Part shown: positions 1 through 59,662 of the stretch, in pieces
Numbering within the stretch: position 1 is the stretch's first letter
Layout of the letters: each line of letters begins with the position of its first letter
Assembly (NCBI RefSeq): GCF_964204865.1
Contig: NC_135252.1
Location: 18,042,001-18,106,000, forward strand
Direction: 5' to 3'
Origin: Styela clava
Taxonomy: Eukaryota
DNA length: 64,000 nucleotides
Translations under genes and position numbers: made by a program
Notes under the pieces: model-generated
Told to the model about the DNA's origin: nothing
Database searches by the model: none
What the model saw: the letters and a program-made list of their open reading frames with translations, nothing else

Positions 1-8550
<8,550 letters not shown>

Positions 8551-14300: not shown

Positions 14301-14427
14301 AGTCAACCGACAAAACATGTTGCTAACCCGCAGGGTACAATATAATTGATCAATAACGTAGGACTAAAATAATCATTTACATTTTTCTAAAACAAATAGA
14401 ATTGATATATGCCTTACATTCAATTAT

Positions 14428-14576
14428 TTATAAAATATCTTCATATTGGCAAACTGCTATTTCGTATGGATTCCATTCTGGAGGATCGGTGATGTCCTCG
14501 TAACCATTTGATGCTTCAGCAATCGTTTCATAGGTGTTGATTGACGTATCCAGATGTTGTTGTGTATCTGTAGTAC
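14428..14576 (-). other. Terminal exon of receptor A encoding an ITAM-containing tail
   Basis: GTTDTQQHLDTSINT-YETI-AEASNG-YEDI-TDPPEWNP-YEIA-VCQ-YEDIL*. This matches the ITAM consensus YxxI/L-x(6-8)-YxxI/L. Confidence 0.85.
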
Positions 14577-17500
14577 CTGTTTTAATATTTATTTGCATGA
14601 AGTTATCGGATACTCAAATATAGGAATGTGTTATATCTCAATAATATTTTCCATTATAATGCTTTATCGATAAACAAGAGTCCACAAGCAATTTTGAACA
14701 AATAAAGTAAAAAACTTATCGCAACAACATCAATTTTCAACCACTAAAAATTCCAAAGCCATCGGTCCAGTGGTTAATGATAAAAAGATTTTTTTAATAA
14801 AATTCAAAATGACAAAACGATTCATAGGCACATCCCGTGTATTTAATATATGTCCTATATTGTGGGTGTCTACATGATAATAAAATTAAATGTATCAGAA
14901 TAAAGTGTTGAGAAACAAGTTATGGAATTGAGCAATTTTCCTAACATATGGGTAACAGTTATCGTCATCAAAAGTCCTGTCGTAATGTGAATCAAATTGG
15001 GAGTTGTGATTTGAAACCATGCGATGTTCTTTCAAATAAATTACGCATTTTTTCTTTTATTCATATTAAATTTATAAATACCTGATATATGTACACAGAA
15101 AGGACATCGTGATAAGTAAAGTCGGGATTCTTACCTGCTGATACAGGTTCTATCTTTTCTTTTTTCGAAACGTTCAATGAAATGCTTGAAATAGTTCCAT
15201 GGACTTTGTCTTTCTTTTTAATATTGCGATGTCTCACATAGCACAGACACACAATAGCAGACAAAACAGCAAGTATTCCTCCAGCTACCACTGCCCAGGT
15301 GATATCTATATGAAAAGTAAAATATGGACGTTGAGTAGTCACCTGAAATTTAGAGAATTCAGAGAAATTTTCAATGTTTTTAAAATAAATCGTCCATCTG
15401 TTACAAACTTCTATGTAATTTGTATATTACAATTCCACCTATTATATATCTAAACAAACTTTAACAATAATATCATAACCTTGAGTGGTCAAATCTTAAT
15501 TACGTTTATTACGCTTATGCATACATAGAAATAGTTTTCATTATCAATCTATTTTGTCACAATTTGTGTTGCAATCTAATTAAGCTGAGTGTGTTAGTGT
15601 TAATAAGGAATGTATAAAACATAAAAATCGCAAATTTACTTTGATTGTTATCTGGAACAATCTTTCTGATTGGAAGCTCATTTAAAAACGCTCAGCTCAC
15701 TAAAACGTTGCATTCAAAGAATTATTTGGTTCGTTGTGTACATTGAAAAATGTTTTTTGTGTTTCTAAGGTTTGTGTGTCTCTGTCTAGACCAGTGGTTC
15801 TCAAACTTTTTTAGTCCCAGAGCCGCATTTCAAACCTCAAAGGTATGAAGAGCCGCACACAAACAATGCAAGGTAAAATAGCAACAAACCTTTAAGCGCG
15901 TAAATCAAATACTAAGTCACCGTAACAACAACACACGTAACAACTAGGGCTGGGCAAAATTTTCGAATAATAAAATATCCGAATGGCATTTAACGATTCG
16001 AATATCCGGTACCACGTGACCTGCGCCGCTCTGCTTGGACACCGAACTCGAGCGTCTCCAACTCAATCGTGAATTGTGCGAGATTTCCCAACGGCGCTCG
16101 ATATCAGAAAAAAAGAAAAATTAGAAAAGTCGTCTTTGCGTTATGGTGTTATAGGCTTATTTTTGCACTTAACGTATCCTTTCAATTCATCATTTTGCAA
16201 AAAAAAAAAAACGTACCGACTGTTCCGTAAATTTAAAAACGGTATTTAAAATAAATTTCCCAATTTTAAACTCGGCATGCTTGGTGACATGTCATTAGCC
16301 ATTTCTTGCATTACCAAACATAAAGTTGCTTAAAATTAAATGTTAAAATGACTTTTCGGCGTTTCATTGTGAAAAAGGCGATTTTAGGTCGTTAAAACAC
16401 TCTAGTTATGTAAATAGCATGGATTTAAAAATGACCAAAAGTTTTTCCAAAAGCTGGTATGAGTTACTTGTATGGAAAACACTCATTAAGTTGTAACCAG
16501 ATAAGAAATGTCATGTCCTACTCCCTTTAAAGCACTTTGTATTAGCTCTTTAGTGATCCCTTCCATCCTTGCCAAGTAATGTTTCGAATATGTAAACATT
16601 TTACTCGACCCTGCATGACCCTGCACCCGTTAAGCCAAGAGTAAAACGTAAAATCAATCGTGAATTTGGTTGTAACTATGCACACTGACTCGTTCACGAA
16701 TTGTTGCGTCTATTATCATTGAAAATGATTACAATTGTTAAATTTTGAAGCATTTGGGCAGTAATAATTAAGCCTCAAGGCATGACATAATCAAAATCAT
16801 TAGGTGAAGTACTTTAATTTGCAAATTCCGTAAAGAAAAATTGAGCATTACTCAATACGTATTTTAGCTATAATAACCATCGGGGTGTTGTTTTGTTGAA
16901 GAAAAAAAAACGTTAAAACTTGAAGGAATTAGGTATAGTTAGAGTTTGACCCTCTATTAGGCACAAAGGTCTAGAAATGCCTTTATTGCCAATTTATTTG
17001 ATCGCTATTTTAAAACGACATTCAGGATTCACGCAATCATAAATTTGCTAGGTTTATCTATCTAATACAAAAATAACACGGACACCATAGAAGAGCATGA
17101 GAAACTTAAATATAATTATAATAAATATCTGCATCTCGGTTACCGTTCACTTTAATCATGTACGGTTAATTTACAAGCGGTGATACTTAAGATCGAATCC
17201 AAGGCAGAGGATAACCTTAGATAATAATTAATTTGGTTTTGAAATCAGTCCTTAAATGTATTCAACAGATGTCGCTGATGTGAACGCAAGGGTATATTAG
17301 AAATATGAAATTTCGATATTCGGCGACCGCTTATTCTTGCAAAAACGAGAAAGGGCGGAAATATAGAATATCAACTTTAGGATATCGCCGCCAAAACGAT
17401 CGCGGTGACAAAGACAATTAGCAATTATGATAAAATTAACCATTAAAAAACGCTATATTGCCGACTTTTTAATGTTTCTATTAATTTCCAAATGGAGTAT

Positions 17501-20500
17501 CGACCTCCGACGTTCTGGATCCCTGTTATGTATAAAAAAAGCATTCAAATTATCCGATTCAAAAAAAGATTCAATTTTGCCCACCCTACCCTAACAGCTT
17601 TTTAATTAGGCTTTGATTTCTAATATGTTTGTCAAAGCGGATCGTAATCGTTGAGGATGCAAGCTGCAGTAGCTGCTTGAGACGATCGCCAGATTTTTCG
17701 GGACTATTTTCGATTACTGGAACAAAATTGAAATGCTATAGAAATTAAAATAATCATCGAGTTATTTGATTTATACATGAGATCTGGAAATGCGACAAAA
17801 ACTGAAAATCCACGAAAGCAAGCCAATGATTACAGCCATGTCTAAAATCTTTCCAAGTGAAAAGTGTCCGATTGGCCGCGAAAACGCTCACTGTCGCGTC
17901 ACTATTGCATCTTATAGGTTAGTCAACGCTACGCAAATAAACACGGGGGAATCCATTCGACTAACTAATAGACTTCAGCATTTTAATTTTGAGTCAATGA
18001 TTAGTTTTCAATGAAAAATTTTCTTTGAAAATAATTAATTTTTAAAACATTAACGGGAGCCGCAGGAAAGGTTGTTGAGAGCCGCATCAAACCCTAGTTT
18101 GAGAATCACTGGTCTAGACTCTAGATGTCTGAGGTTAGTCACATGGATCACCGGCAGGAAATCTTATTGTGGTGTATTCATTCTAATAAAAAAATTTAAT
18201 TCCTGCGTAAAAATTTTTCACTTTTGACAAAGAAACCGGGAGATTAATTTTGTTTCATTTTTTAATCACCTGTAAAAGATTTGCCAATCACGAGTGCGTC
18301 ACTAGCACCGAATGAAACACCTTCATTAGTTTGTGCAGAAATCACAAGAAATATTCTGCAATATACAACGTTAGATCAAAAATTACAAAAAATAATGTTT
18401 ATATTTGACGTTTTTTTTAAATATAGTTTTATAGTTTTATAGATTTTGTTATCTGCAGCTGATATGCATATAAATATTCGTTATCTAAGATACCTCAATG
18501 TATTCTTTTCATAATTGAATAGCACTAAAATCTTGCAATACAGAGGCGGTGTTTCAAAATGGCGCGTCTAACTTATTGTTCTCTATATATATAATATATT
18601 TAAAAGGACCAGGGTAAAGTAGGGCAAGTGGGACTCGGCATTTATGTACATCCATACAGAAGCAATGAAGTTTAATATTCGAGAAACGAAAACTTTATTC
18701 TCGTACCTGTATGTTTCAGAGAGTGACAATCTCTTGTTATATGCAGCATAAGTATTTTTCGAATTATTTCCATTACCACTGTTGTTTTTTCCGCTAATGT
18801 CACACCTTGTTTTTACTTGATCTCCAAGAATCAGACTCATTTTCGGACGGTTATGCCCAACTCTTCAAAAGGAAAATATGTATTACACAATGTTTTGGTA
18901 AGGCCGCAGCATGTTGTATATATATATGAATCTGTATACTGAAATTTATTTTAGTGGTTGGGCTTTTAATAAAATTACCAAATTTATTTATTTAACAAAT
19001 TCGATTACATTGTAAATAAAACGAACCCACCAGAAAGATTGTGTTTATAGTTTCGCAAAATATCAAACTTGCATTATGTGTAATTGTTATGTTACACCTA
19101 CATACACATAATTAACACAAATTAGAAGCAGCAAATCAGGAAGAAGGAGCAATATCCCACCAAATTATTTTGCATAATTCTAACATAATATAATATCTTG
19201 TTGAAACCGTTCATACGTGAATCATACCTGGGTCTGTTCAAAGCTATTGCAATATATTCATCTTCAATTTCTGATTTATTCAGTTTACTCATTCGTGCAT
19301 TGTTAAAATCAGGTAAAGTGTTGCTTGTTTTTTTGACTTGTACGATGATAAAGTAACAACTAATAGTGTATAATAACATGGTGATAAAAAAATTAGTAGA
19401 ATTTATAGATAGTTATTGCTGTCTTTACAATGTATTACAATGGAGAAGTACTATTTTTTGCTTATTTTCCCTGCCAAATATTTTGTGTCTGATGGTTGAT
19501 TGGGCTTGTAACTGATATTTCAAATCCTGTATGGCAGCATAATTCAACCAAAGGCAGATTTAGAAGGCATAGCCAGACATTACATTTGACTTATAGTAAG
19601 CGTTAATTTACATCTTTATTCTGGCCAGTAAAACAACTTTTTACTTTGGCGAGAGACATCAAGTATATAATTAAATCACCTTATTGGACCATTTGTTTCA
19701 TCTGGAATGGTAATTGAAAATTCCATTATTCCGTAATTAGTTATTTCATCTCTGGTTGTTGGTACCGGAATGTTGGATGGTGCTGTAAATTACAAACAAC
19801 AGTTAAAAATTTATCTCTCTTTCTATTTTTATTTACCATTACGCATATGCTATATGCAATTGAATAAAGTATTAAACTCGGTTTCTTGAGTGCAGTATTT
19901 TTAATAGCTGTACTCTAAATTTTTATAGAATAAGACCTAATCCGCAATTGCAACAATAGAATAAAAGCGTTAAACAGTCCGTCAAATAGCTCAAAAACAT
20001 GCCAATGACACAATAGTCTGAAAACAAGAGGGATATTCGGTAATAAATATATTCATTGTGATATCAAATGACAAGAGCATAAAACGAATCCGTAGAGTAA
20101 CTAAGGAAAAATCTGAATTACCATAAGTATCGGTAACACATTCCCCCACCGCCTCTGACCCTGGTCCAAACCCTGCACAAGTTTTAGCTTGAATAGAGAC
20201 ATTGTATTTTCTATTGAAAATCTTTGGAAGAACATATGAGGTTTTTTCAGATGGCAGAAATATTCCATTTATTTTGAAACCATCTTTATAGTATGACGAC
20301 GCTTTTGTTGAGTTGATAACAAGCTAAAATGAAATGATTAGTGTTTAGGTATAATTGTTTTTACAATTTACGGAATATTATTCTCTATTTTTGGGCATCG
20401 AACATAGTCTTAAAGATCGAACATAGTCTTAAAGAAAGAGTCCAGTTTCAAAGAGTTTTATTTGCTGAAACAATTAAGCTAAACTAAATCAACTTGAACC

Positions 20501-23500
20501 ACTTGAAATTCTAAAACAAATGACGTTTTCGTGTCGCATGATTTAAACACAAAGTGATAAAAAATCGTCTTGTCAAAACTCTGAATCATTCACATCGTCT
20601 GTAGACAGTATACAAACCTTGAGACCGTAGATATATTCCTGGTTTATTACTGTCGACCAAGAAACATTGCAGGAACCATCATCAGTCATCCCAAGACTTG
20701 GTTTTGTAAAGGGACCGGGTAAACCCCCTGTGGTTGCAATTGTGGTTGTTGCATATTGGCTGAGGCAAGTTGACGTAGTTGTTAAGCATGGCTCAATCTA
20801 AAAGTTTAGAGTCAGGTAATTTCAAATTGATAATTTGTCATACGGCCATAGATTTTGCAACAGACAGATTATCGTTCATTTAAGATTTGCAAATCCTATA
20901 TTACAAAAAATACCTTGATAATATAAGATGTTGACGGTTGCAGACTTGTCACGTTGGACGTCATGGAGACATTATTCGGCGTCGTTAAGAAAACTTTATA
21001 ATTGTTGAAGTTGATAGAATTCATAATCTGAAATCTATGATATAACGGTATTCGATTGTTTATAAAACAAGCCGGTAGACGACTGGGATCTCCGCTGACA
21101 CATGAAGCGGCCCGCGTATCAGCAAACCGTTACCAATCACGCAATTTTGCACTCATAACGACAGCGTACTTTGCAACGACAGTGAACGGGATACCAAAAC
21201 TGCCAATTCATTTTAGATCTGCGCGTCTATCATGTATTCTTGGGTGAGCGGTGTACCGCGGCTAATATTAAATCATGTTCACTAAAAGGCTTCCCCAGTT
21301 CATGAATTAACGAGACGAACTATGCCTTGTTCGAATAGGTATTTACTTCTGCGGGGGTTAGCAATCTCCGAATTTTAATTTTCGAGATAGTTTACGAAAT
21401 AATAGCAACAACCTAAAAAAAATTTATTATTTCTCAACGATCGACACATTTTTCATTGATGCCATGAAAACGAAACAACAAACCGGTTGGTGAAACGCAC
21501 ATTAGTAGGATAACAGCAAAACTCTTATTGGAGATTTAAACCATAAGGCTCCATAGAGCGGAGATCTAATAAGCATGGATGATTTGAAACAAACTGACAA
21601 CAACTGAATGTATTAAACTTACTTACAAGCACAAGTAAAACGGTTAGATAATTCAGTATTTTGAATACTGTAATATTCACTGTTGAATGTTTCGTTTTTT
21701 GCTATTATGATATTTTATTGGTAGCATTCTTTTAAAAGTAAATTTATTATAAAATATACCGTAAATTTTTGCATTTAACATGTCAGCCTATTTAAAACAT
21801 TATTCGGCTTCAGTTTCTTCCTTTTTAATCGTGAGTTTACGTGGGATGTGTTTATTTCCGATTGAGAACATCGGGTCGTATTTTGTGCCGCTAGATACCT
21901 GTGTTGGATTCCAACTCCACGAACATGTGGCCTCCAAGTGACCAATAAATGGGAATTGCAAGGTGATGATGTAATGTTTGTGATTGATGGTTGACTTGGA
22001 ACTGAAAATATGTTTAAACCTGCATTCACCAGAAATCTTACATGTTTGTATATTCTTTAACACATATATAGTAGCATTACAGATTATATTATAAAAGCGT
22101 TGTTGAGCAATAACAAACAAATAATTTGTTCCTACTGCTCAATAAAACAAACGTATTTGATTATAAAAATTTAAGATCCACACACAACATCTTTCCTATA
22201 TTCCCACTATTTATATAAACTTTGTCGATGGCTATCCTACTACATAGAGGCAATTTATTGGTGTATTATTAAATTTTATTTAAGTGCATTATGTGTTTGG
22301 CCTCTCACCTTTTACATTGAGAATTCGTGTTAACTCATGAAAGGTTTGTCCGACTGTATTTGATGCGAAACATTTGTATTGTCCTTCGTCTGCAATTGTC
22401 AATTGTTTCAAATAGAAAACTATTTTTTGTCCTACTTTGGATTGGTAATTTATTTGTGTTGAAGTGAGTACAATGTTTCCTCTCATCCATTTAAAAGTCG
22501 GTGGTGGAAACCCAGATGCCATGCATGTTATTTCTTTTCTGCCAGTATATGAATCCGCAATGAAGTTAGTGTTTGATAACTGTATATCGTGCGTTCCAGC
22601 TGAAAAGTTATATAGATGATACATTTTTATATTTTAAATATTTAAACAAGACTCCATAAATATCTAAGATGGAGTAAACTGCTAATTTAATGTAACGAAT
22701 TCCATCTGCAATGAATCTTGATTAAAGTTTCAATAATTTGTCCTATTTTACCTTGTTCGCAAATGTAGTAATGCTTGTCAGTACAATATGTGATTCTCGA
22801 TGTGTAATCACTCAATGAAAATGAATAGCAAGTAGAACCTGTGTTTTCTAACCAGAGTTTATCATCAGGTCTGAAATGACTAAAAATCATAAATTTGAAA
22901 AATTAAATATGTTTTGTTACATTTGATCCAATATTTATTTTTGATATTTACTAACTTGGAGTTCAAATAGGTCTTGATCAGACCTTTCGTTGTCGATGTC
23001 AATTTCAAAATTCGAGATTGGAGTTTATAATAGCATTCTGTTCGAGCTGTTTCATAAGTAACCTTAGGATGAGGACTTCCAATTGCAGTCAGTTTGTATA
23101 TTCCCGAAGAAATTGTAAAGGGAGTCGCTAAATCGAAACAATATAAAAATGTAAGCATGAATGGTTGTTGGTTCATGTTTTGGTTTATAAAAAACACAAA
23201 ACGTTCCATAGAGTTTTATTTTAGACTCATTATTTTTTTGAACGCTTGGGTTTATTATACACCTCGATAACCACTCTGTCAAAATGAATTTGCGCAAAAA
23301 TGAGCCAAACCTTTTGCTTCCATAACTTATTTTGATTTGTTAAAAATTAATGGCGTATGGTGATTATATGATCATATATTATATAGAAGATCATGTAATT
23401 ATTTAATCATAATTATTATTGTAAGCAATATATTTTATAAAGATATGTAAGTTCAATTTACCACTGCCATTCATTACATCAAGCTTTAATATGAGATCAA

Positions 23501-26500
23501 ACTACATTCCTACTAATACTAATACATACAATGAAAGCAATGTGAATGCCAGGCAACATAATAGTAATTATAAACTATTCATAAGTCGTGGAGTTTCATT
23601 TGGTCACAATTTCATAGGAACATAAATATTTAAAGAGTTTCATTCGAATATTGCTCTTATGACTGGATGATAGACTTTATTAGATTATGTATTTTGGTAA
23701 AAATAACAAGATTGTGAAAACCGATCGACCATTGAGTGAGGAAAATCATATATATATCATAATGATTTTTGTTTTATATATATATCGTGATAAATTTTGT
23801 TTGGCGTTACAAACATTTATATACGGTATATATGATTGGTTTGCTGACCTTCTATGCATATAACTCCTTTTTGCTGGTTTGATCCATAATCATAAAATTG
23901 TCCGTTCTTGTCAATGACGAGATAATTTTCACTCCTTCCCCCATTTGGTTCTCCTGAATTCCTACAAAGTATCAAAACGTGCAATAACAAATTGAAGTAT
24001 TATTTATAATAAATTTTGAATAGAACTTTCGCAAAAATTAATATTCCTGCGTAAATGCCTGTTACAAATATGTGCTTTCTACCTATGACCGACCTTCATT
24101 ACATGAAAATATTTTATTTACAAATAAAATCTTGCTATCGTTAGGCTGATAACCGAATGCGTAAGTCACTCTTTGACAGTTTTGAGTTTTTTTACAAGAG
24201 TTATTTATTTAATGCTGCTCACCTGTCAGTTGACTCAGATTGTATCCCAAGTTTAAGAAGTTTTCTACGTTTTTCTCAAAACTGCTAAAAGCTACTTACG
24301 ATTTGAATATTAGATATTTGTAATAGTGAGTGATTTATGTGATTTATGAAACAAAACTATTTACCAAGAAGTAATCGATGCTGAAGATCCATCTATCCAT
24401 TTCCAATGTCCTTCAGAAGCTTCATCTGTTGCTCCAATCCAATATGAAGTGGTTCCAGAACTACAACATATTTAATTTCCTTATGATATGCCATTGAAAC
24501 CCATTGATATTAAAACGCCGAATGTAATAAAAATTATATTTTATAACGAATATTTAAAAAAATGACTAATTACTTTCTATTAATTTCAAAGGATTTTAGT
24601 CGAGAAGATCCTTTACATATTTATGACAATAATTCAAACATAAAATTTTGCATATTTATTTAAGTGTCTCTAGTACATTCCCATTATTTCTAAGCTTACA
24701 ACTAAACATTTTCAATAAAGCATTAACAATTTTATACGTGGATCGTTTTCTTATTACGTTGTCGTCTTGTTGTAATTAGTATTTTTGTACCATTGGATCG
24801 ATTGCTTTGAAATTTTTAGTAGTTAAAGATTGTATTTTTCGCTAGTAGGCTATTACTTTTGTTTATTTTCGTACTACATTTTCATGTATTTGAGCAACGC
24901 ACTCTTGTTTATCGTATTATAGGCTTGACTATGGTGGTCCATCGTTGTCACGCTTAAATTCGAAAAAAAAATTTAAAAATAAAATAAAAAACTGAAAATT
25001 AAAGTAAAATAAAAAAATAGTGGTGAAAAAACATAAAAAAATAAAACAAAAATGAAAAAAAAACAAAAATGTAAAAAACAAAATTAAAAATAAGAGCGAA
25101 ATAAAAAAAAAAAAAAGTAAAAAAAAAAAAATTTAACTAAAAAATAAATAAAAAGGTTGACAACGATGGTCCGCCTCGTGGCCCATCGTTGTCACGCGTT
25201 CTTATTTTGAGAAAATTTGCTGCTGCTTGGGACCAACGTTGTCATGAAAAATCCTACGCGCACAAACGGGGTTCCATGGGGTTCTAACTCACTTCGAATT
25301 TCTTTGAGCAATATTCAATATGAAAATCTTTTATAAATTCTCCATGCTACAAGTTTAACTACAAGTAATATAAATATAATAATGATAAGAGAATATAGAT
25401 TTGGATACGAAAATTCGGAAAATTTGTTTTTAATTGTAGAAGGTAATTGAATTGGATTATGCTGCTTAACTGTTAGGTTGTCCGGACACACGTGCGATGC
25501 CGGTACTGTCTGACCAAAGGTGTTATAGTCGCTTTGCGCCTGACCGTATCGGTGAAACGAATGGGAGATACGGATAGTCTAGTAGAATATAGACTACTGA
25601 AACACTCTCTGCGCCTGCCCCATATCGTACAGCCATAACATACCGATCCAGACCAATGATCCATCCCTTGATATACTATATTCTACAAGACTATCCTTAT
25701 CTCCCATTCGTTTCATGAGTGATTGCATGGGTACCGTTACGCTCAGACGCAAAGCGACTATAACCACTTTGGTCAGATGGTAGCGGCATCGCACGAGTGT
25801 TCGGACAACTGAGCAGTTAAGCAGCATTCTTTAATTCAATTACCTTCAACAACCTTCCGAATTTTCGTATTCAATTCTATATTTTTTTAACATTATTATA
25901 AATGTATTACTTGTGGTTGAACTTGTAGCATGGAAAATTTATAAAACATTTTCATATTTAATTTATTGATTATTCCTGAAAACGTTGGTCCCAAGCAGCA
26001 GCAAATTTTCTCAAATTGAAAACGCGTGACAACGATGGGCCACGAGGCGTTGTCAACTTTTTTTATTTTATTTTTATCCGAGTTTTTTTTTTCAATTTTT
26101 TTTTTTTTTTACATTTTTTTATTTCGTTTTTATTTTATTTTCGTTTTTATTTTTCATTTTTTTTTTCATTTTTTTTTTTTATTTTTGTTTTCAATTTTTT
26201 TTTTCATATTTTTTCACCTCTATTTTTTTTATTTTGCTTTTATTTTCAGTGTTTTTTTTATTTATTTTCCATTTTTTTTTTCAATTTTACGCGTGACAAC
26301 GATGGGCCACCATACTTGACTAAATCGTCACAGAGAGCTGATTCATAAATTCCTTAACCTCACGGGAGGTTAGTTAGTTCTTATGTGTACATTAGGATGA
26401 AATTCTAATTTGAATGGTCATTGAATGGAATTTAATTGTAACGGAACATATTGACTTGCTTACGAATTTTTACGCCTATTATCGTTGGAGACGAAAATAC

Positions 26501-27498
26501 ATTAGTGGCATTAGGACGCCTCCGTGCAGTAATAATTAGGGTATGACGTCATCAACTTGTTAAGTTCAGCGTTGAATTTGTAAATTACTTAAATACATTT
26601 GTGAATTTCTCCGTAACGATCTTAGCTATAACACAAGAAAACGATAGAACTAAAAATAATCAATTATAATTAACTAGTAGACTCAATAACACTCACGTTC
26701 AAGGTTATTTTATACTACATTTGGGGCATTAGGTCGAATATCCAAAGTGATATTTGCAAAAGCGCTTTTGCGACATTTCGCGGGCTAGAGCTTTGGCGTA
26801 CGCATTTGAAAAGCCATGAGTGACGTTTTAAGGCCTAATGGTTGACGACGAAAAAAATTGGAAGTGACCCCACAAAATGACCCCAGGATGGTCGATAGGA
26901 ATACTGCCAAATTTCACTAACACTGTTAAATCGAACGAAGATAAGAGTAAAGATTAAATAAATCATCACCTTCTGATTGTGTTAAGAACGTCCTTTTTTA
27001 CAGAGCTAACATCAAGTTGAACAAGACTTGATCCGCTTCCACACAAGAATTTTGCTCCTGACCAAGAATACTTAGTGTTGTAAAAAGTTAGTTTATAAAA
27101 AGGTCGGTTCACTGTCTTCCAAAGCCCTAAAAAATTAGAACTATTCTTCACAAATATTATTTGTTAATCACGGAAATAATAAGTTTTGCAAATAATTGAA
27201 TATACCATTGGAAGACAAGGATCTCAAGTGATATAATATCGAGGGTAATTGTAAACCGATAATCCAAGTTACAATAAATTACTAGCCCACTTCCGAAGAG
27301 AAAACTATAACATATAGGTTGCCGTTGCACATAATTCGAATTACTGATTAATATGCGACATTGCCTAATACATACACAATTCATTGCTACATATAATAAC
27401 TAACAATAGGCAAACAAATAAAAATAATAATTTTCAGTACCTGCACTAGATGTCGCAAGAAATGTTAACAAAACAAACCAGCAATTGAAACCAAGCAT
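14428..27498 (-). CDS. Receptor A: type I membrane receptor SP-CTLD-CTLD-Ig-FN3-FN3-RPTP-like juxtamembrane domain-TM-ITAM tail (17 exons, 802 aa)
   Basis: Exons in transcription order: 27498-27441 (MLGFNCWFVLLTFLATSSA), 27126-26970, 24460-24365 (YWIGATD..WKWIDG), 23961-23849 (EPN..VIC), 23127-22956, 22870-22752 (YICEQ), 22599-22309 (Ig: ITCMASGFPPPTFKW..DEGQYKC), 22001-21899, 21034-20914 (LQPSTSY), 20797-20618, 20323-20122, 19782-19680 (PDETNGPIS), 19359-19228 (EYIAIAL), 18862-18707 (LGD..YNKRL..YR), 18355-18270, 15305-15135 (TM), 14576-14428 (tail). All junctions are GT-AG with consistent phases; total 2409 nt with no internal stop. Confidence 0.9.
15792..18111. mobile_element. hAT (Buster/Charlie-type) non-autonomous element with a nested second element, in intron 15 of receptor A
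   Basis: TIRs cagtggttctcaaac...gtttgagaatcactg and a perfect 8-bp TSD gtctagac. Absent from the paralogous site in receptor B (~43611-43640). Confidence 0.9.
15945..17588. mobile_element. Nested hAT-like element
   Basis: TIRs tagggctgggcaaaat...attttgcccacccta inside the 15792-18111 element. The TSD is imperfect. Confidence 0.65.
24930..26314. mobile_element. Foldback-type non-autonomous DNA transposon, IS3EU-like
   Basis: Termini TATGGTGG...CCACCATA and a 6-bp TSD cttgac (24924-24929, 26315-26320). The ~650-bp arms are inverted copies of each other. The paralogous site in receptor B (~51727) is empty. Confidence 0.8.
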
Positions 27499-33940: not shown

Positions 33941-33949
33941 TTGAAACTC

Positions 33950-36900
33950 TCATAAAACTGTCTCATATTGGCATATATGTTTTGAAAAAATAAAGTAATA
34001 ACGTTCTCGTGACAACATCAATTTTAAACCACTTAAAATTGCAAAAGAATTGATCCAGAAGTTAACAATGAAAAAGATTTTTGACAAAAATTCAAAAACG
34101 AAAAAACGAATCATAGGTCCACTCCGGAATTGAATAATTGTCCTTTATTGTGGGTGTCTAAATAATAATAAAATTCATTGTCGGCATCAATAGTCCAGTT
34201 GTACATGTGAAAGAGATTAAAAGTTTTGATTTGAAACCATGCGATGTCCTTTCAAATAAATTATGCATGTTTTTTTATTGATATCAATTTTGTAAATACA
34301 TGATCTATATACACAAGAATCGCCATCACCATAGGTAAAGTCGGCATTCTTACCTACTTATACATGTTCTATCTTTTCTTTTTTCGACACGTTTAATGAA
34401 ATGCTCGTTATTTCTTCATGGGCTTTGCCTTTTTTTTTTACTATTGCAATTCCTCACATAATATACTGACCCAAAAGCGGACAGAATAGCAAGTATTCCT
34501 CCAGCTATCACTCCTAAGATGATATCTGTGCCAAGAAAATATAAAACGTAGCCATTGAGTAGTCGCACAAAAATTAAAGATTTGAAAGAAATTTCCGAAG
34601 CTTATAAAACATATCGCCTATTTGTAACAAATTTCTATGTATTTTGTACTTTGCAATAACTCCTGTTATACATTCGAATAAACTTTTATAAAAATATCAA
34701 AACTTCAAGTGATCAAAACTAAATATATTAGACTTATAAAGATCGAGAAATACGTTCCTTGGTCTATCTAATTTGTCACAGTTTGGATTGCATTCTGATT
34801 AAAGCTGAGTATGAATGCATTCTGATTAAAGCTGAGTATGAATGCGTAGGATAGATAAATCATTAAACGTTCAAATTTAATTTGATTGGTAGAAGAATCT
34901 GGAAGAATCTTGTCAATGAAAAGTTCGTCACTGACTTTGAACAAAACTGTGTTTTTACTCGGTGTTGCTGTTACAAGAAATATTCTGCAAAACATAACAA
35001 AAGATATGCAATTACTCGATGAGTTACAAACTAACAGCATTTTCATCATATATTGACATCAATCATTAGCTGATATCGAGAAATATTGTTTCTATAATCA
35101 TAAATGAAAACAGAAAAATAAAACAACCAATGACTTGCTAACTGTTTCAGTTTCTCTTACTTGTATGTTTGCGAATTTGATAATCTTTTATCGTATGCTT
35201 TATATACATTGTCAAAATTATTTTTTTGTTTTATGTAGTTTTTTCCACTGACATCGCAAGTAGTGTTTACTTCGCTCCCAAGAACAAGATTTATGGACGA
35301 TCAATTTGACCCAATGCTTGGAAACGAAAAAAACATATATATATATATATATATATATCATTAACATATATATCATAAAAATGGTAAATGTGTGATATAC
35401 TGGACTACATTAATTTTGATACGAAATTACTTAAATCACATTTAGAAATGAATCAAACAAGCTATGCAATATGATGAAGCTAATTGATTGAATGTATCTG
35501 TAATCCAGCAATTTCTCATTTAAGCTATACCTTATGTCAACAATCAATTTGAATTTATGTCAAATTTACTATATATTATCACGCATCACGAATTCATTAC
35601 TATCCAAACAGTGATAAGACAATATATTCAGGAAATTATTAGTTATGACAATAGATAATGCGGCCCGCTTAATATTGATGGTTGTTTTCATTTAAACTAA
35701 ATTTTTGAAAGTTTCTCTGTTCATACCTGGTTTTATCAGGAGCTACTGCAATGTATTCATCTTGCAATCTGCCGGAACTCAATTCAGCCATACGTGATCT
35801 TCCGATAGAAGACAAACTTTTAGTGTTCACATTGGCTTGAACGATAATGAATAAACAACTGAAATATTAAAAAGAAAATGCGCTGAGGGATAAAGGACAA
35901 AAATACTAAATTTAAAAAGAATGTAGGTTAAAAAAACTCATTCGTAACTTTCAAACAGTAACTAAAGAAACAACAACCGATATATATATATAGCATTATG
36001 ATTTATCACTTTAACTCTAAAATGTGTTTCAGGGGAACAACTGTTATATAGACTAACTACCTCACAGGGCCATTGGTTTCATCTGGAATGTTAATTGAAA
36101 TCGCTAAAGTTCGATTGTTAATTTTTTTTTTTCGGCTATAGGTGATTGTAGAATAGACGACACTGTAAACATGAACTTTTTAACATAAATGTAAATGCAC
36201 TCTAAACATAAAAAGCGATAATGAGGATATTTTTTATACATTTGTTTTGATATGAGTATTTTTTTTTATTCAAAATATAATATTAATAACGGTAAAACAA
36301 ATATACAGTCAATATGAAATTAAGTACCCTTTTTAATAAAAGTAGTTTTTTAAATTTTGTGTTATTAAAAGGTAGTAATAATGCATTATAAATCACCAGA
36401 GAAATTCATACTCGCCAAAAAAATCTTTCAAGTTTTCGTACCAATAGCACAATTGTTTTAGCCACTGACGATTTTCCAAAATTGATAAATCGCCTATCTC
36501 TATCATTTATCAATTGCGAGTAAACAAATTATTGATGTATTCAATAATTTATGAAGTAGATTATTTACATCGTGATTCGTGATTGAAATTTATATTTTAA
36601 GAGTCCAACATAAATTTGCGAGAAATATATTAAAAAAATTTCAAGCGTCTTACCGTTAGCATCGGTAACACATTCCCCTACCGCGTTTATCTCTGTTCAA
36701 ATCCTGCACAAGTTTTTGCTCGAATATAGACATTGTAATTTCTATTGAAAACTGTTGAAAGCACATAATGAGGTTATCTGAGGTGGTAGCAGTATTTCAT
36801 ATCTTTTGAAGCCATTGTTAAAGTATGACGACACTATAGCTCTTGTTGAGTTGAATTATTTTTACAATTTACGGAAATTATTCTTCATTATTCGGCATCG

Positions 36901-42267: not shown

Positions 42268-42416
42268 TTATAAAACAGTCTCATATTGGCCAACTGCTAT
42301 TTCGTATGGATTCCATTCTGGAGGATCAGTGATGTCCTCGTAACCATTTGATGCTTCAGCAATCGTTTCATAAGTGTTGATTGACGTATTCAGATGATGT
42401 TGTGTATCTGTAGTAC
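42268..42416 (-). other. Terminal exon of receptor B encoding an ITAM-containing tail
   Basis: GTTDTQHHLNTSINT-YETI-AEASNG-YEDI-TDPPEWNP-YEIA-VGQ-YETVL*. Confidence 0.85.
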
Positions 42417-45400
42417 CTGTTTCAATATTTATTTGCATGAAGTTATCGGATACTCAAATATATAAATATGTTATATCCCATTGATTTTTTTCATTATAAT
42501 GCTTTATCGATAAACAAGAGTCCACAAGAAATTTTGAACAAATAAAGTAATAAACTTATCGCAACAACATCAATTTTCAACCACTGAAAATTCCAATGCC
42601 ATCGGTCCAGTGGTTAATGATAAAAAGATTTTTTGAATAAAATTCAAAATGACAAAACGATTCATAGGTACATCCCGTGTATTTAATATATGTCCTATAT
42701 TGTGGGTGTCTACATGATAATAAAATTAAATGTATCAGAATAAAGTGTTGAGAAACAAGTTATGGAATTGAGCAATTTTCCTAACATATGAGTAACAGTT
42801 ATCGTCATCAAAAGTCCTGTCGTACTTGTGAATCAAATTGGGAGTTGTGATTTGAAACCATGCGATGTTCTTTCAAATAAATTACGCATTTTTTCTTTTA
42901 TTCATATTAAATTTGTACTATGTACACAGAAACGACATCGTCATAAGTAAAGTCGGGATTCTTACCTGCTGATACAGGTTCTATCTTTCTTTTTTTCGAA
43001 ACGTTCAATGAAATGCTTGAAATAGTTCCATGGACGTCGTCTTTCCTTTTATTATTGCGATGTCTCACATAACACAGACACGCAAAAGCAGACAAAACAG
43101 CAAGTATTCCTCCAGCTACCACTGCCCAGGTGATATCTGTATGAAAAGTAAAATATAGACGTTAAGTAGTCACATGAAATTTAGAGAATTGGGAGAAAAT
43201 TTAAAAATAAATCCTCCATCTGTAACAAACTTCTATGTATTTTGTATATTGCAATACCACCTATTATATATTTAAACAAACTTTAACAATCATATCATAA
43301 CCTCAAGTGGTCAAACCTTAATTACTTTTATTACGCTTATGCATAGAAAAAGTTTTCATGATCAATCTATTGTGTCACAATTTGTGTTGCAATCTAATTA
43401 AGCTGAGTGTGTTAGTGTTAATAAGGAATGTATAAAACATTCAAATTGCAAATTTAATTTGATTGTTATCTGGAACAATCTTCCCGATTGAAAGCTTATT
43501 TAAAAACGCTCAGCTCACTAAAATGTTGAATAAATACAATTTTGCATTTAAAGAATTATTTGGTTCGTTGTGTACATTGAAATATTTGTTTTGTGCTTTT
43601 AAGGTTTGTGTGTCTGTGTCTAGATGTCTGAGGTTAGTCACATGACTCGCCAGACCAAATATTTTTGTGGTGTTTGCAAGATATTCATTCTAATGTGAAT
43701 TTTTAATTTCGGCGTAAAATTTTTCCCTGAAAGTACAACTTTGTTTCTTTTTTAATCACCTGTAAAAGGTTTGCCAATCAGAAGTCCTTCACTAGTACCA
43801 AATGAAACACTTTCTCTCGTAGGTGTAGAAGTCACAAGAAATATTCTGCAACATACAATGGTGTCATGTAATTAATTCAATATTCAAAGAATATATTGTT
43901 CATACTTAACTTTTTTATAGTTTTAATTTTTTTTATTTATAGCTGCTATGCAAATATATATCCGATAACTAATGTAATCTATATATTCTTTTCATAATTA
44001 AATAGCACTAAAGTATTGCAAAAAAGAGCCGGTGTTTCAAAAATGGCGCTTTTAACTCATTGTTCTATTATATATAATATATGTAAAAGAACGAGGGGTA
44101 AGTAGGGCAAGTGGGACTCGGCATTTTTGTACATCCATACAGAAGCAATGAAGTGTAATATTCGAGAAACGAAAACTTTATTCTCGTACCTGTAACTTTC
44201 AGAGAGTGACAATCTCTTGTTATATGCAACTAACGTATTTTTTGAACTATACCCTTCACCACTGTTGTTATTTCCGCTAATGTCACACCTTGTTTTTATT
44301 TGATCTCCAAGAATCAGACTTATTTTCAAACGGTTTTGCCCAACGCTTCAAAAGGAAAACGTTTATTACACAATGTTTTGGTAATGACGTAGCATGTTGG
44401 ACAGCTATATATATATATATATGATTCTGTTTACTAAAAATATTTATAATAGTTTTAGTCTTAATAAATGTAATTATTAAAAAAAATTATTTATTCTAAT
44501 ATATTTGATCAAGTTGCATAAAAAACAAACCCACTAGAAGGGTTGTGTTCAGAGTTTTGCAGGATATAATATCAAACTGGCATTATTTGTAATTGTTATG
44601 ATACGCCTACATACACCTAATTTACACAAATTCGAAACTGCAAATCAGGAAGAATATATGTTTTGGCAACATCCCACAAAATAATATAGCATAATCCTAA
44701 CATAATGTTCTATCTTGCTCGAAACGTTCATACGTGAATCATACCTGGTTCTGTTCAAAGCTATTGCAATATATTCATCTTCAATTTCTGATTTATTCAG
44801 TTTACTCATTAGTGCATAGTTAAAATCAGGCCGAGTGTTGCTTGTTTTGTTGACTTGTACGATGATAAAGTAACAACTAATAGTGTATAAAAAAAATTAG
44901 TGATAAAAAAAAATTAGTAGCGTTCATGGATATTTGTTACGATCTTTGAAATGTATTACATTGAAGAAGTATACCGTGATCTCATAACCAATGTTTCAAA
45001 TCCCGTATGGCAGCGTAATTCGCCAAAGGCAAACTTGAAAAGCATCGTCAGACATTTCATTTGACCTATTGCAAGCATCAATTTTCATCCCCTTTCGGGC
45101 CACTAAAACAACTTTTTACTTTGAGAAACATCAATTAGATCAGGGGTTCTCAAACTTTTGGTGTTGCGGAGCCCTTGGAAAGGTTGACTATTATTCACGG
45201 AGCCCCAAAATAAATGTTAAAGTTGTTACTTTCAGATTAATATTCCTGAGCAAGTTAAAAGTACTTTACTTAATTTAAATGCTGAACCTTAGGGTTAATA
45301 CAAGTCATACATAAATCTAAATTTCAAACATAAATTATATATACACTAAAGCTGTAAATTTGACACTTGACAAACATATTAATAAATAAGGGGTCGAATC

Positions 45401-57636: not shown

Positions 57637-59662
57637 TCATGAAACAGTCTCATACTGGCCAACTATTATCTCGCATGAATTGCATTCTAGAAGATCGGTG
57701 ATGTCCTCGTAACCATATGATTGCTGAAGCAATCGTTTCATAAGTGTTGATTGGCGTATTAGGCTGATGTTGTGTATCTGTAGTACTTTGTAATATAATT
57801 TAATACTCAAACATGTTATTTCCATCAATAATCTAATATTTCCAATTTAATGTTTTACTTATAAATAACCTGGCAATTGTCCTATATTAACATTAATTTA
57901 ACAGAATAAAGTGGAAAAACATATTATAGAATTGGCAGATTTTTTTTATAATACAAATGCACTAGTATAAATATCGGTTCAAAAAGTCTAGCTGTATATG
58001 TAAAAGAATTTGAAATTTCATACGATGTTCTTTCAAAAACATTACTCATGTTTTCTGTTATTCAGATCAATTTTGTAAATATATGATCAATGGACACAAG
58101 AAACGACATCGTTATGAGTTATTTAGGCATTCTTACCTGTTGACACATGTTCTATATTGTTTTTTGAAACATTAGGTGAAATGCTTGGTATTGTACCATT
58201 CTCTCTGCTTTTTTTCAATATTGCGATGTCTGAAATAATATACTGATCCAACAACATACAGCAATGCTAGAACTAACGCCCCTGGGATTATTCCTGTATA
58301 AAAACTAGTAAAAAGTAACTGTTGAATGTCAAAATAAAATTTTAAAATATTTCTGAAGTTGCTAAAATAAATCGTCTATTATGCATATTAACATTCCAAC
58401 AATAGCTAACAATCTAAAAAAAATACATTTTTAAAGAGACTTCACCAAAAATATTATAACTTCAATTGGCCTAACAGTAATTTATCTGCCATATAGCCAC
58501 GCGGAGAAATATTCGCCATTGTCAATTTATTGAGTCACATTTTGTGCTGTAATCTAATTACACCGAGTACGACGATGTGCGGGAAAGATAAAACATTAAA
58601 CCTTTCAAATTTAATTTTATTGCTATCTGCAACAATTTCCTCGATTGAATTGTACAAAATTGAATATTTACTCGGAATTGACGCTACAAGAAATATCCAG
58701 CGAAATATAATAAAGTTGAATATACAGAGTGTCTCAAAAATAAGTATACATTTTCAAATTTGCATTACAATCTAATAGCTTATTCAAATTTGTTATAAGT
58801 TTGAAAAATATTCTATAAACCTTTGGAAACAGATTATCATCTTTATATCTCTTTGAATTTATTTATTGACAGTTTATTAGACCGCAACGTGGGAACTTCA
58901 ATTTCGAGACATTTCAGCCACATTTTGGCGCATTCTTGTTCTACACTTTGCAATAAATCTTGTGTACCTAGTCCACATGTTGCTCTAATTTTTTATTCCA
59001 ACTCTTCAAGGTTTTGAGGTCGTGTGGAGTAAACTTTATTTTCAAGGAAACCCCAAAGAAAAAAGTCAGTGAAAGGTTAAGTCAAGTGAACGAGCAGCCC
59101 ATTTCAGAGGACCTCTGCACCCGATCCACCTATCGGGAAAAAAACTGATTTAAGTAATCTCTGACTTTCCTGGCGTAATGTGCAGTAGCTCCATCTTGCT
59201 GAAGTTACAGTTTTTGACCGAAGCATTATTTTTCAGCTCTGATAGGAAACATTTGGGAGCATTTCCAGATAGTTTTCTCCTGTGACAACTGTGGTTCTTC
59301 TGGCATCATCACGAAAAAAATAACGGCCTATGATGTCTTTAGCGAAAATTGCACACCACACAACAAGCTTCGGTGAATGACTGGAAATTAGTTGAAAGCC
59401 GCAAATACAATTTAGTATATAAAATGTCAAGTTAAAACATAATGCAGCTTCAGTTTTTTTAATCTATTTTTTGTGTGTTTACGTGACAAGTGTTTACTTC
59501 TGGGTACGAACAAAAGCTCGTATTTTGTGACAAGATATTAACAACTTGAAAGAAAGATACCTGTGTTCAATTCAACTCCACAAACATGTGGCTTCCAAGT
59601 ACCTAAGAAATTGAAATTGCAAGGTGACAAACTTATGTTGGTAAGTTATGGTTGACTTGGAA
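57637..59662 (-). pseudogene. Pseudogene D of the receptor family (FN3 exon 8, part of exon 15, TM exon, ITAM exon)
   Basis: Exon 8 (59561-59662) has an early TAA. The TM exon (~58137-58293) is frameshifted. The tail exon (~57637-57786) has a mutated acceptor and a +1 frameshift between YETI and YEDI. Confidence 0.85.
58725..59400 (-). mobile_element. Tc1/mariner (rosa/DD41D-like) transposase relic inserted in pseudogene D
   Basis: Minus-strand HSPKLVVWCAI..IIGRYFF..VTGENYLEML and QQDGATAHYARKVRDYLNQFFPDRWIG..WAARSLDLT..DFFLWG. One terminus is TA-CAGAGTGTCTCAAAA at ~58723. Confidence 0.8.

What the first reader, a model, noticed from the sequence alone, without database searches (positions are those of the whole stretch)
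14428..14576. Four-tyrosine signalling tail with a canonical ITAM, conserved across paralogs
Seen: the 149-nt terminal exon encodes YETI-x6-YEDI-x8-YEIA-x3-YEDIL in A and YETI-x6-YEDI-x8-YEIA-x3-YETVL in B (42268-42416). The ORF track missed both intact copies. Established: YxxI/L-x6-8-YxxI/L is the ITAM bound by Syk/ZAP-70/Shark-type tandem SH2 domains, and pYEEI-like sequences are preferred Src-family SH2 ligands. Inference: an activating receptor with a built-in ITAM. The TM has no charged residue, so an adaptor chain seems unnecessary.
Basis: partly seen in the sequence, partly recalled or inferred. Interest (0 to 1): 0.75.

Follow-up and report, generated by a model that had tools for sequence, protein, structure and literature searches.

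The report
Sea-squirt receptor tail with four tyrosines
This is the last coding exon of a sea-squirt (Styela clava) lectin-type surface receptor gene, and it encodes a short inner tail with four strictly conserved tyrosine docking sites that fits the ITAM pattern only loosely and whose signalling role is untested.

Summary
On the minus strand, 14428-14576 (copy A) and 42268-42416 (copy B) encode ...YETI-x6-YEDI-x8-YEIA-x3-YEDIL* in A and the same ending in YETVL* in B.

The exon fits in phase onto a charge-free membrane exon (A 15135-15305, donor G|gtaaga, G+GT = Gly).

The genome is Styela clava, by RefSeq names. It holds 11 intact copies of this exon in one 235-kb cluster. All four tyrosines are invariant in 11 of 11. 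The exon differs by 8% between copies, against about 37% in the flanks.

Four RefSeq models of three other paralogs join the membrane exon to this tail. No such model or cDNA was found for A or B, and B's model stops before the membrane exon.

"Canonical ITAM" is only a pattern match:
- The spacer is x6 in 9 of 11 copies and x4 in 2 of 11.
- The plain pattern occurs 29 times in the window's six-frame translation.
- No relative was found outside the species.

A Syk-type kinase gene is present in the genome.

My reading is a real phosphotyrosine docking tail whose partner is still open. The scan met this receptor family before on other DNA of the same genome.

The parts
14428..14576 (-). Copy A terminal coding exon (149 nt: GT + 48 codons + TAA). 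It encodes four YEx[I/A] sites. A second in-frame acceptor (ctacag|AT) would start the exon at 14567.
14577..15134 (-). Copy A intron (558 nt) between the membrane exon and the tail exon, gt...ag. If read through it gives ...SAGKNPDFTYHDVLSVYIYQVFINLI*.
15135..15305 (-). Copy A membrane plus juxtamembrane exon (171 nt, phase 1 at both ends). Acceptor catatag|AT, donor GCAG|gtaaga. Uncharged membrane segment ITWAVVAGGILAVLSAIVCLCYV followed by RHRNIKKKDK.
   Evidence: The acceptor agrees with RefSeq paralog models and with a contig piece ending at 15307.
18271..27127 (-). Copy A ectodomain exons: two lectin-like domains, an Ig I-set exon (22292-22633), FN3-like and stalk exons down to 18271-18357. 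No stops fall inside the aligned exon parts.
   Evidence: (I-set E 7e-12). Pfam Lectin_C, I-set and fn3 are on record for the RefSeq relatives.
42268..42416 (-). Copy B terminal coding exon, intact, ending QYETVL*.
42966..43136 (-). Copy B membrane exon, intact from the shared acceptor catacag|AT. The upstream site the eye first picks is dead in B (ttcat, then TAA).
33949..33972 (-). Copy C: only the last ~24 nt of the tail exon remain (..QYETVL*).
34325..34529 (-). Copy C membrane exon, broken by a 1-nt insertion in an A run and a TAA before the donor.
57637..57786 (-). Copy D tail pseudo-exon. It has a 1-nt insertion (frameshift), and the first acceptor is changed from acag to aaag.
58099..58312 (-). 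Copy D membrane exon, frameshifted.
40..6947 (+). Neighbouring receptor tyrosine phosphatase gene. Its stalk exons (40-87, 361-438) are homologous to those of the tail genes. Phosphatase exons lie at 3930-6947.
   Evidence: RefSeq P0016, three pieces at 95% identity or more

Best explanation
The stretch is the last coding exon of a Styela clava-specific type I receptor. The receptor has a two-lectin-domain head, an Ig domain, an FN3-like stalk and an uncharged membrane span. After splicing in phase 1 to the membrane exon, the roughly 85-residue cytoplasmic tail ends in four YE-x-(I/A/V) sites.

Most likely these are phosphorylation sites for a Src-type kinase. Once phosphorylated, they would dock SH2-domain proteins, so the receptor would signal by itself without an adaptor chain. 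The first two sites (YETI-x6-YEDI) could be read together by the genome's Syk-type kinase, but this is only one possibility.

Shown here: the exon, its reading phase, its conservation, its junction in paralog gene models, and the presence of a Syk-type gene. Inferred: phosphorylation, the SH2 partners, and an activating outcome.
For: - Motifs and coordinates are as stated.
- The phase fits: donor GCAG|gtaaga plus acceptor cag|GT gives Gly.
- 11 intact copies lie in one cluster, C3 17.96-18.20 Mb. All 4 Tyr, and the Glu at +1 of Tyr 1, 2 and 4, are invariant in 11 of 11.
- Mean p-distance between copies is 0.079 in the exon, 0.371 in the upstream intron and 0.375 downstream. Mean pN/pS is 0.49.
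- 9 of 11 tail exons have an intact membrane exon with a conserved G|gtrag donor 479-782 nt upstream.
- Where the membrane exon is broken (C, D, L009), the tail exon or its first acceptor is also damaged.
- RefSeq models XP_077966859.1, XP_077966536.1, XP_039268400.1 and P0010 join the membrane exon to this tail.
- Four YEx[ILVA] in a row occur in 0 of 30 random windows.
- A 33%-identical relative (P0021) also ends in four YExI/YDMI sites.
- The genome has an intact 615-aa SH2-SH2-kinase ORF. Its best full-length PDB matches bar one entry are SYK (E 4.6e-98) and ZAP-70 (9.5e-97), and both SH2 domains keep the FLxR arginine.
Against: - No transcript evidence for A or B. The reads call gave only one 85-nt contig inside the tail exon and one piece inside the membrane exon. 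It gave no joint, and the runs are only guessed to be RNA.
- RefSeq's model of B (P0014) ends before the membrane exon. An older B-like model (P0001) reads through the donor to another end. No public protein carries A's or B's tail.
- Synonymous divergence (0.13) is far below intron divergence (0.37). Part of the exon's conservation may therefore be gene conversion or poor intron alignment.
- For the recent pairs A/B and A/L007 the exon is no better kept than the intron.
- No orthologue outside the species could be examined.
- Nothing shows phosphorylation.
Confidence: 0.6

Rival explanations
1. One reading: a true ITAM. Tyr 1 and Tyr 2 are both phosphorylated and bound together by the tandem SH2 domains of the Syk-type kinase, making this an activating receptor with a built-in ITAM.
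For: YETI-x6-YEDI fits Yxx[IL]-x6-8-Yxx[IL] in 9 of 11 copies. A Syk-type gene is intact in the genome. The membrane span is uncharged. Built-in ITAM receptors are reported in another ascidian, Halocynthia (passage in PMC5465252). Syk-family kinases are expressed in the styelid Botryllus (passage in PMC12582321).
Against: 2 of 11 copies, both with RefSeq models, have x4. x6 is the lower limit of the definition; from recall, the vertebrate chains use x7-8. There is no acidic residue at -3 of Tyr 1. The distant relative P0021 has x10/x10/x17. The pattern is common in this AT-rich DNA: 29 hits in the window. No sequence relation to known ITAM chains was found.
Confidence: 0.3
2. The tyrosines are mainly sorting signals (YxxPhi, read by clathrin adaptors). 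They would drive endocytosis or lysosomal delivery of a lectin-type uptake receptor rather than kinase signalling.
For: All four sites fit Yxx-hydrophobic or nearly so. One sits two residues from the C-terminus, as in lysosomal membrane proteins (recalled). The head carries lectin-like domains.
Against: Glu at +1 is invariant at three sites and near-invariant at the fourth. That suits SH2 and kinase recognition and is not needed for adaptor binding. Four sites are more than sorting needs. The third site has Ala at +3 in 11 of 11 copies.
Confidence: 0.15
3. In copies A and B the membrane and tail exons are unused relics. These genes would be expressed only as truncated (secreted) forms, and the exon looks intact because the copies are young or homogenised by gene conversion.
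For: RefSeq's model of B ends in read-through after the stalk exon (KPFTGD). Four of the family models end that way (P0011, P0013, P0014, P0015). A and B differ by 5-6% in exon and intron alike. No public protein has their tails.
Against: Both copies keep intact membrane and tail exons with splice sites, while C and D in the same window have decayed. Older copies (L010, L011) keep the exon at 11% divergence against 45% in the intron, and RefSeq models them as spliced.
Confidence: 0.1

Closest known systems
Halocynthia roretzi haemocyte glycoprotein with two ITAMs (J Biol Chem 1997;272:32006). Known to me only through its citation in PMC5465252.
   Same: An ascidian of the same order, with a single-pass membrane protein carrying its own ITAM-type tyrosine motifs. 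It is reported to be tyrosine-phosphorylated and tied to phagocytosis and aggregation (passage).
   Different: I could not obtain its sequence (paper not held), so homology is untested. Nothing is known of the function of the Styela genes.
Botryllus schlosseri fester coreceptors (FcoR), PMC12582321
   Same: A styelid ascidian with clustered, fast-duplicating type I receptors. Their tails carry ITIM, hemITAM and 'core' YxxI/L/V motifs in varying numbers. Src and SYK family kinases are expressed (passages).
   Different: FcoR are Ig-only receptors with hemITAM or ITIM. Here there is a lectin-Ig-FN3 head and four YExI sites. No sequence match turned up in the profile search. The paper's supplementary figures could not be seen.
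Vertebrate Fc-gamma-RIIA and the ITAM chains (CD3, FcR-gamma, DAP12, Ig-alpha/beta). Recalled.
   Same: Works like: paired Yxx[L/I] sites in a cytoplasmic tail. In Fc-gamma-RIIA the motif sits in the ligand-binding chain itself, with no charged membrane residue.
   Different: The spacers are x7-8 (x12 in Fc-gamma-RIIA) and the motif is split over two exons in the adaptor genes. Here the spacer is x6 or x4, in one exon, with no sequence relation.
Src-family SH2 ligands of the pYEEI type. Recalled.
   Same: Glu at +1 and Ile/Val at +3 at three of the four sites.
   Different: No binding data exist. The third site has Ala at +3.
Receptor tyrosine phosphatases with the same head in Styela clava (RefSeq P0016, 'receptor-type tyrosine-protein phosphatase C-like')
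   Same: 73% identity over the FN3/stalk part to the tail-bearing P0002. One such gene lies in this window on the other strand.
   Different: Two phosphatase domains replace the tyrosine tail.

Membership tests
ITAM | Two Yxx[L/I] sites 6-8 (at most 12) residues apart in the cytoplasmic tail of a membrane protein | tested here: inconclusive
   Met in A and B and in 9 of 11 copies (x6). Not met in 2 of 11 (x4). The bare pattern is frequent in this DNA: 29 hits in the window against 14 +/- 5 in random windows.
ITAM | Acidic residue shortly before the first tyrosine (original Reth consensus, recalled) | tested here: not met
   The residues before Tyr 1 are S-I-N-T in 11 of 11 copies. The nearest Asp is at -6, in 2 copies only.
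ITAM | Sequence or gene-structure kinship with known ITAM chains (motif split over two exons; recalled, and echoed by note s1-829419) | tested here: not met
   The whole motif lies in one exon. The profile search of 1.84 billion representatives gave 7 hits at E <= 0.001: 2 Styela clava proteins and 5 low-complexity repeats.
ITAM | Both tyrosines phosphorylated and bound by the tandem SH2 domains of a Syk-family kinase | not testable with these tools
   Needs peptide binding or cell assays.
ITAM | A Syk-family kinase exists in the organism | tested here: met
   G000 C5:24185278-24187023 (minus strand) holds a 615-aa ORF with SH2, SH2 and kinase domains. PDB matches are SYK 4.6e-98 and ZAP-70 9.5e-97.
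Src-type SH2 docking site (pYEEI-like) | Tyr followed by Glu at +1 and Ile/Val/Leu at +3 (recalled) | tested here: met
   Site 1 is YETI in 11 of 11. Site 2 is YE[DE]I in 11 of 11. Site 4 is YE[DTN][IV] in 11 of 11. Site 3 has Ala at +3.
Tyrosine-based sorting signal YxxPhi | Tyr with a bulky hydrophobic residue at +3 in a cytoplasmic tail, bound by adaptor mu subunits | tested here: inconclusive
   The pattern is met at three sites. Binding is not testable here.
Styela clava lectin-Ig-FN3 receptor family (RefSeq 'uncharacterized protein' models) | Same exon set as the RefSeq members, from lectin head to membrane exon and tail | tested here: met
   Copy A aligns exon by exon to P0012 and P0010 with no stop inside the exon parts. 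All 13 relatives found are Styela clava.

The most novel reading that the evidence does not exclude
The cluster could be a home-grown paired-receptor system of a vertebrate sister group. One lectin-Ig-FN3 head is wired either to a double tyrosine phosphatase or to a self-contained YExI/ITAM-like tail that feeds the genome's intronless Syk-type kinase. The same ligand could then switch tyrosine signalling on or off. This would be an independent invention of activating/opposing receptor pairs, with the ITAM built into the ligand-binding chain.
Probability: 0.2. Interest if true: 0.75.

Novelty: new member of a known kind. Interest (0 to 1): 0.4.

Why it matters
Tunicates are the closest living relatives of vertebrates. 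How tyrosine-motif immune signalling was wired before adaptive immunity arose is still pieced together from a few cases (Halocynthia, Botryllus).

This finding is a clean, testable example: an 11-copy, species-restricted receptor family with an invariant four-tyrosine tail. It sits next to a phosphatase twin with the same head, in a genome that also has a Syk-type kinase.

If the tail binds Syk, ITAM-like wiring arose here independently, in one exon and without an adaptor. If it binds only Src-type SH2 domains, it warns against calling ITAMs by pattern in AT-rich genomes. As it stands the function is unknown, and similar ascidian receptors are already in print.

Tried and rejected
- Reads. The one search for runs listed 12, none on record as RNA. 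I laid X1, X2, X4 and X9 on 14350-20340. Only short contigs came back: 85 nt inside the tail exon, and 75 nt inside the membrane exon with 38 unplaced letters beyond 15307. No joint between the exons appeared, so splicing of A could be neither shown nor refuted.
- Pfam on ten single exon frames. Only the Ig exon passed. The lectin halves and FN3 pieces are too short alone. The lectin and FN3 labels rest on Pfam hits on record for RefSeq relatives and on alignment to them.
- Word search with the membrane-exon frame. It gave one hit, a 205-aa RefSeq model that reads through the donor.
- Word search with the tail region of P0010. It found only P0010 and P0002, so there is no model for A or B.
- Poly(A) signals downstream were uninformative in AT-rich DNA.
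- The acceptor cag|GTGACT upstream of the membrane exon was rejected. It is dead in B (ttcat, then TAA). The RefSeq models use the site at 15305.
- ITIM, ITSM and NPxY readings were rejected. Position -2 is Asn at sites 1-3. At site 4 it is Ser in 6 of 11 copies only, and not in A or B. 'NPY' lacks the spacer residue.
- Paper searches. 'A74' + Halocynthia + ITAM gave 0 papers. Styela clava + ITAM gave 5 papers, none on this family by its listing. Styela clava + C-type lectin + tyrosine phosphatase gave 1 unrelated paper. These three searches are my basis for saying the family is not in print in the held library.
- What I saw of each paper: passages only of PMC5465252, PMC12582321, PMC13344425, PMC4016189 and PMC10253181. 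The 1997 J Biol Chem paper is not held. Supplementary figures of PMC12582321 (motif alignments, list of signalling homologues) were not seen and may bear on the comparison with FcoR.
- Recalled, from no call: the pYEEI preference, the Reth consensus, spacers of the vertebrate chains, Fc-gamma-RIIA, lysosomal GYxxPhi, and the two-exon split of ITAM genes.

Full report
WHAT IS THERE. The finding lies on the minus strand. Read as reverse complement, 14428-14576 follows an acceptor (aaacag|GT) and encodes, after a split codon, TTDTQQHLDTSINTYETIAEASNGYEDITDPPEWNPYEIAVCQYEDIL, then TAA. Copy B (42268-42416) is the same with YETVL at the end. The ORF list missed both because the 61-codon open frame has no start codon.

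GENE MODEL.
- 558 nt upstream lies a 171-nt exon (15135-15305). It encodes DITWAVVAGGILAVLSAIVCLCYV-RHRNIKKKDKVHGTISSISLNVSKKEKIEPVSA and ends GCAG|gtaaga.
- The final G plus the GT that opens the tail exon makes Gly, so the two exons fit in phase 1. The membrane segment has no charged residue.
- A second acceptor 9 nt further on (ctacag|AT) is also in frame (G+AT = Asp). Across the genome's copies, the first acceptor is in frame in 9 of 11 and the second is present in 10 of 11.
- Upstream, copy A aligns exon by exon with RefSeq relatives: two lectin-like domains, an Ig I-set exon (Pfam E 7e-12), and FN3-like and stalk exons. No stop falls inside the aligned exon parts.
The lectin and FN3 labels come from Pfam hits on record for the relatives.

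ORGANISM AND FAMILY.
- Every protein relative found is named Styela clava by NCBI or UniRef: 1 of 1, 13 of 13, and 3 of 3. Earlier notes of the scan had said so, and I confirmed it this way.
- The window holds four tandem paralogs (self-comparison). A and B are intact at the 3' end.
- C has a frameshifted membrane exon with a stop, and only the last ~24 nt of the tail exon. D has a frameshifted membrane exon and a tail exon with a 1-nt insertion.
- On the plus strand at the left end lies a receptor tyrosine phosphatase gene whose stalk exons are homologous to those of the tail genes.

CONSERVATION.
- A six-frame search of the whole assembly with the 48-residue tail gave 14 matches. Eleven are intact exons, all on contig C3 between 17.96 and 18.20 Mb: five on the minus strand, then six on the plus strand. 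Two of the remaining matches are the pieces of D. One is a weak hit with a stop on another contig.
- In the 11 intact copies all four tyrosines are invariant. So are Glu at +1 of sites 1, 2 and 4, and Ile at +3 of sites 1 and 2. Site 3 is YEIA in 10 and YDIA in 1. Site 4 has Ile at +3 only in A and Val in the other 10.
- The spacer between sites 1 and 2 is six residues in 9 copies and four in 2 (L010, L011).
- Mean pairwise difference is 0.079 in the exon, against 0.371 in 240 nt of upstream intron and 0.375 in 250 nt downstream. Mean pN is 0.064 and mean pS is 0.132.
- Caveats. pS is much lower than the intron figure, so gene conversion or poor intron alignment may add to the contrast. For the young pairs A/B and A/L007 the exon and the intron differ alike.
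- 9 of 11 tail exons have an intact membrane exon, with the same acceptor and a G|gtrag donor, 479-782 nt upstream. L009 has a frameshifted membrane exon. In L007, homology to A ends just after where the donor should be, and no membrane exon was found within 1.5 kb.

IS IT SPLICED?
- The profile of the 11 tails, run against 1.84 billion representative proteins, found 7 proteins at E <= 0.001. Two are real, both from Styela clava. Five are low-complexity repeats.
- With cluster members and the word searches, four public proteins carry the tail: XP_077966859.1 (copy L008), P0010 (copy L010), XP_077966536.1 (copy L011) and XP_039268400.1. In all four the membrane exon runs straight into the tail...VSAAGTIIT......VSAGTTDT......VSADTQHH.... 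Three different in-frame acceptors are used.
- These are Gnomon models, and I could not see their RNA support.
The RefSeq model that maps to B at 95% identity or more (P0014) ends in read-through after the stalk exon. An older B-like model (P0001) reads through the GCAG|gtaaga donor and ends elsewhere.
- My single reads call gave only an 85-nt contig inside the tail exon and a 75-nt piece inside the membrane exon that stops at the 15305 acceptor. It showed no joint, and the runs are only guessed to be RNA.

IS IT AN ITAM?
- At the level of the pattern, yes for A and B. But the pattern is cheap here: 29 hits in the window's six-frame translation against 14.0 +/- 5.1 in 30 random windows. Four YEx[ILVA] in a row occur only at the two tail exons, and in 0 of 30 random windows.
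- The signal is therefore the fourfold YExI tail and its conservation, not the ITAM spacing.
- Further points against 'canonical':
  - x6 is the lower limit.
  - Two modelled paralogs have x4.
  - No acidic residue precedes Tyr 1.
  - The motif is in one exon.
  - There is no kinship with any known ITAM chain.
  - The 33%-identical relative P0021 keeps the head, stalk and juxtamembrane TIS(T/S)IS, but has YEHI-x10-YEEI-x10-YEFI-x17-YDMI.
Its best full-length structure matches are SYK and ZAP-70, apart from one entry titled EGFR. Both SH2 domains keep the phosphotyrosine-binding arginine.

MECHANISM.
- My best reading (0.6) is a self-signalling receptor tail. Clustering by ligand brings a Src-type kinase to the YExI sites, and the phosphorylated sites dock SH2 proteins.
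- Whether the Syk-type kinase reads sites 1 and 2 as a pair is open (0.3).
- A sorting role for the YxxPhi sites (0.15) and non-use of the exon in A and B (0.1) remain possible.

WHAT IS KNOWN.
- Built-in ITAM-type tails in ascidians are in print. A Halocynthia haemocyte glycoprotein has two ITAMs (passage in PMC5465252). Botryllus coreceptors carry ITIM, hemITAM and 'core' YxxI/L/V motifs, with SYK and Src kinases expressed (passages in PMC12582321).
- Oyster Syk is reported to work downstream of ITAM-bearing Ig receptors, and a Ciona SYK accession is listed (passages in PMC13344425).
- I found nothing on this Styela family in three searches. The genes are 'uncharacterized protein' or misnamed in RefSeq.
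- The scan has met the same family, and its phosphatase twins, on other pieces of this genome.

VERDICT. This is a new member of a known kind: invertebrate receptors with their own tyrosine-motif tails. Interest is moderate.

Noticed in passing
window 40-6947 (+): A receptor tyrosine phosphatase gene whose stalk exons (40-87, 361-438) are homologous to those of the tail genes. Its older RefSeq model (P0016) passes from the stalk straight to '...VEEEEISSTNVPL...' and the phosphatase domains, with no membrane segment. A membrane exon may be missed or skipped in that model.
   Followed up: partly
RefSeq models P0011, P0013, P0014, P0015; in the window, B at about 43755: Four family models end in read-through just after the stalk exon (KPFTGD / KPFAGD / KPYPDGE). 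These are either soluble isoforms or truncated predictions.
   Followed up: no
G000 C5:24185213-24187060 (L015 413-2260, minus): An intronless 615-aa Syk/ZAP-70-type gene (SH2-SH2-kinase) in one open frame. An intronless copy of a normally multi-exon gene may be a retrogene.
   Followed up: partly
G000 C3:18260013-18260153 (minus): An SH2-domain exon (E 1.3e-12) lies about 60 kb beyond the last tail exon of the cluster. The gene was not identified.
   Followed up: no
window 15750-18150: The intron between the stalk and membrane exons of copy A holds a very high-copy repeat. Summed contig depth there is 100,000-430,000 in run X9, against about 1,000 nearby, with many internal joints. It is probably a mobile element.
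   Followed up: no
window 24930-25962 versus 25313-26314: An inverted repeat of about 1 kb at 72% identity, with Phe-rich low-complexity frames, inside an intron of the lectin region of copy A.
   Followed up: no
window 23820-23999 (-): The second half of the first lectin-like domain reads ...NSGEPNGGRSENYLVI.... It contains an EPN triplet, which in C-type lectins marks mannose-type calcium sites (recalled, not tested).
   Followed up: no
L008 about 1480-1500; all copies at the tail-exon acceptor: Tandem in-frame acceptors at -3, 0 and +9 nt. RefSeq models of different paralogs use all three, which adds or drops 1-3 residues at the junction.
   Followed up: partly
G000 C3:17964248-17964391 (L007): An intact tail exon whose homology to copy A stops just after the expected donor of the membrane exon. 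No membrane exon lies within 1.5 kb, so it may be an orphan tail exon or may follow a large insertion.
   Followed up: partly
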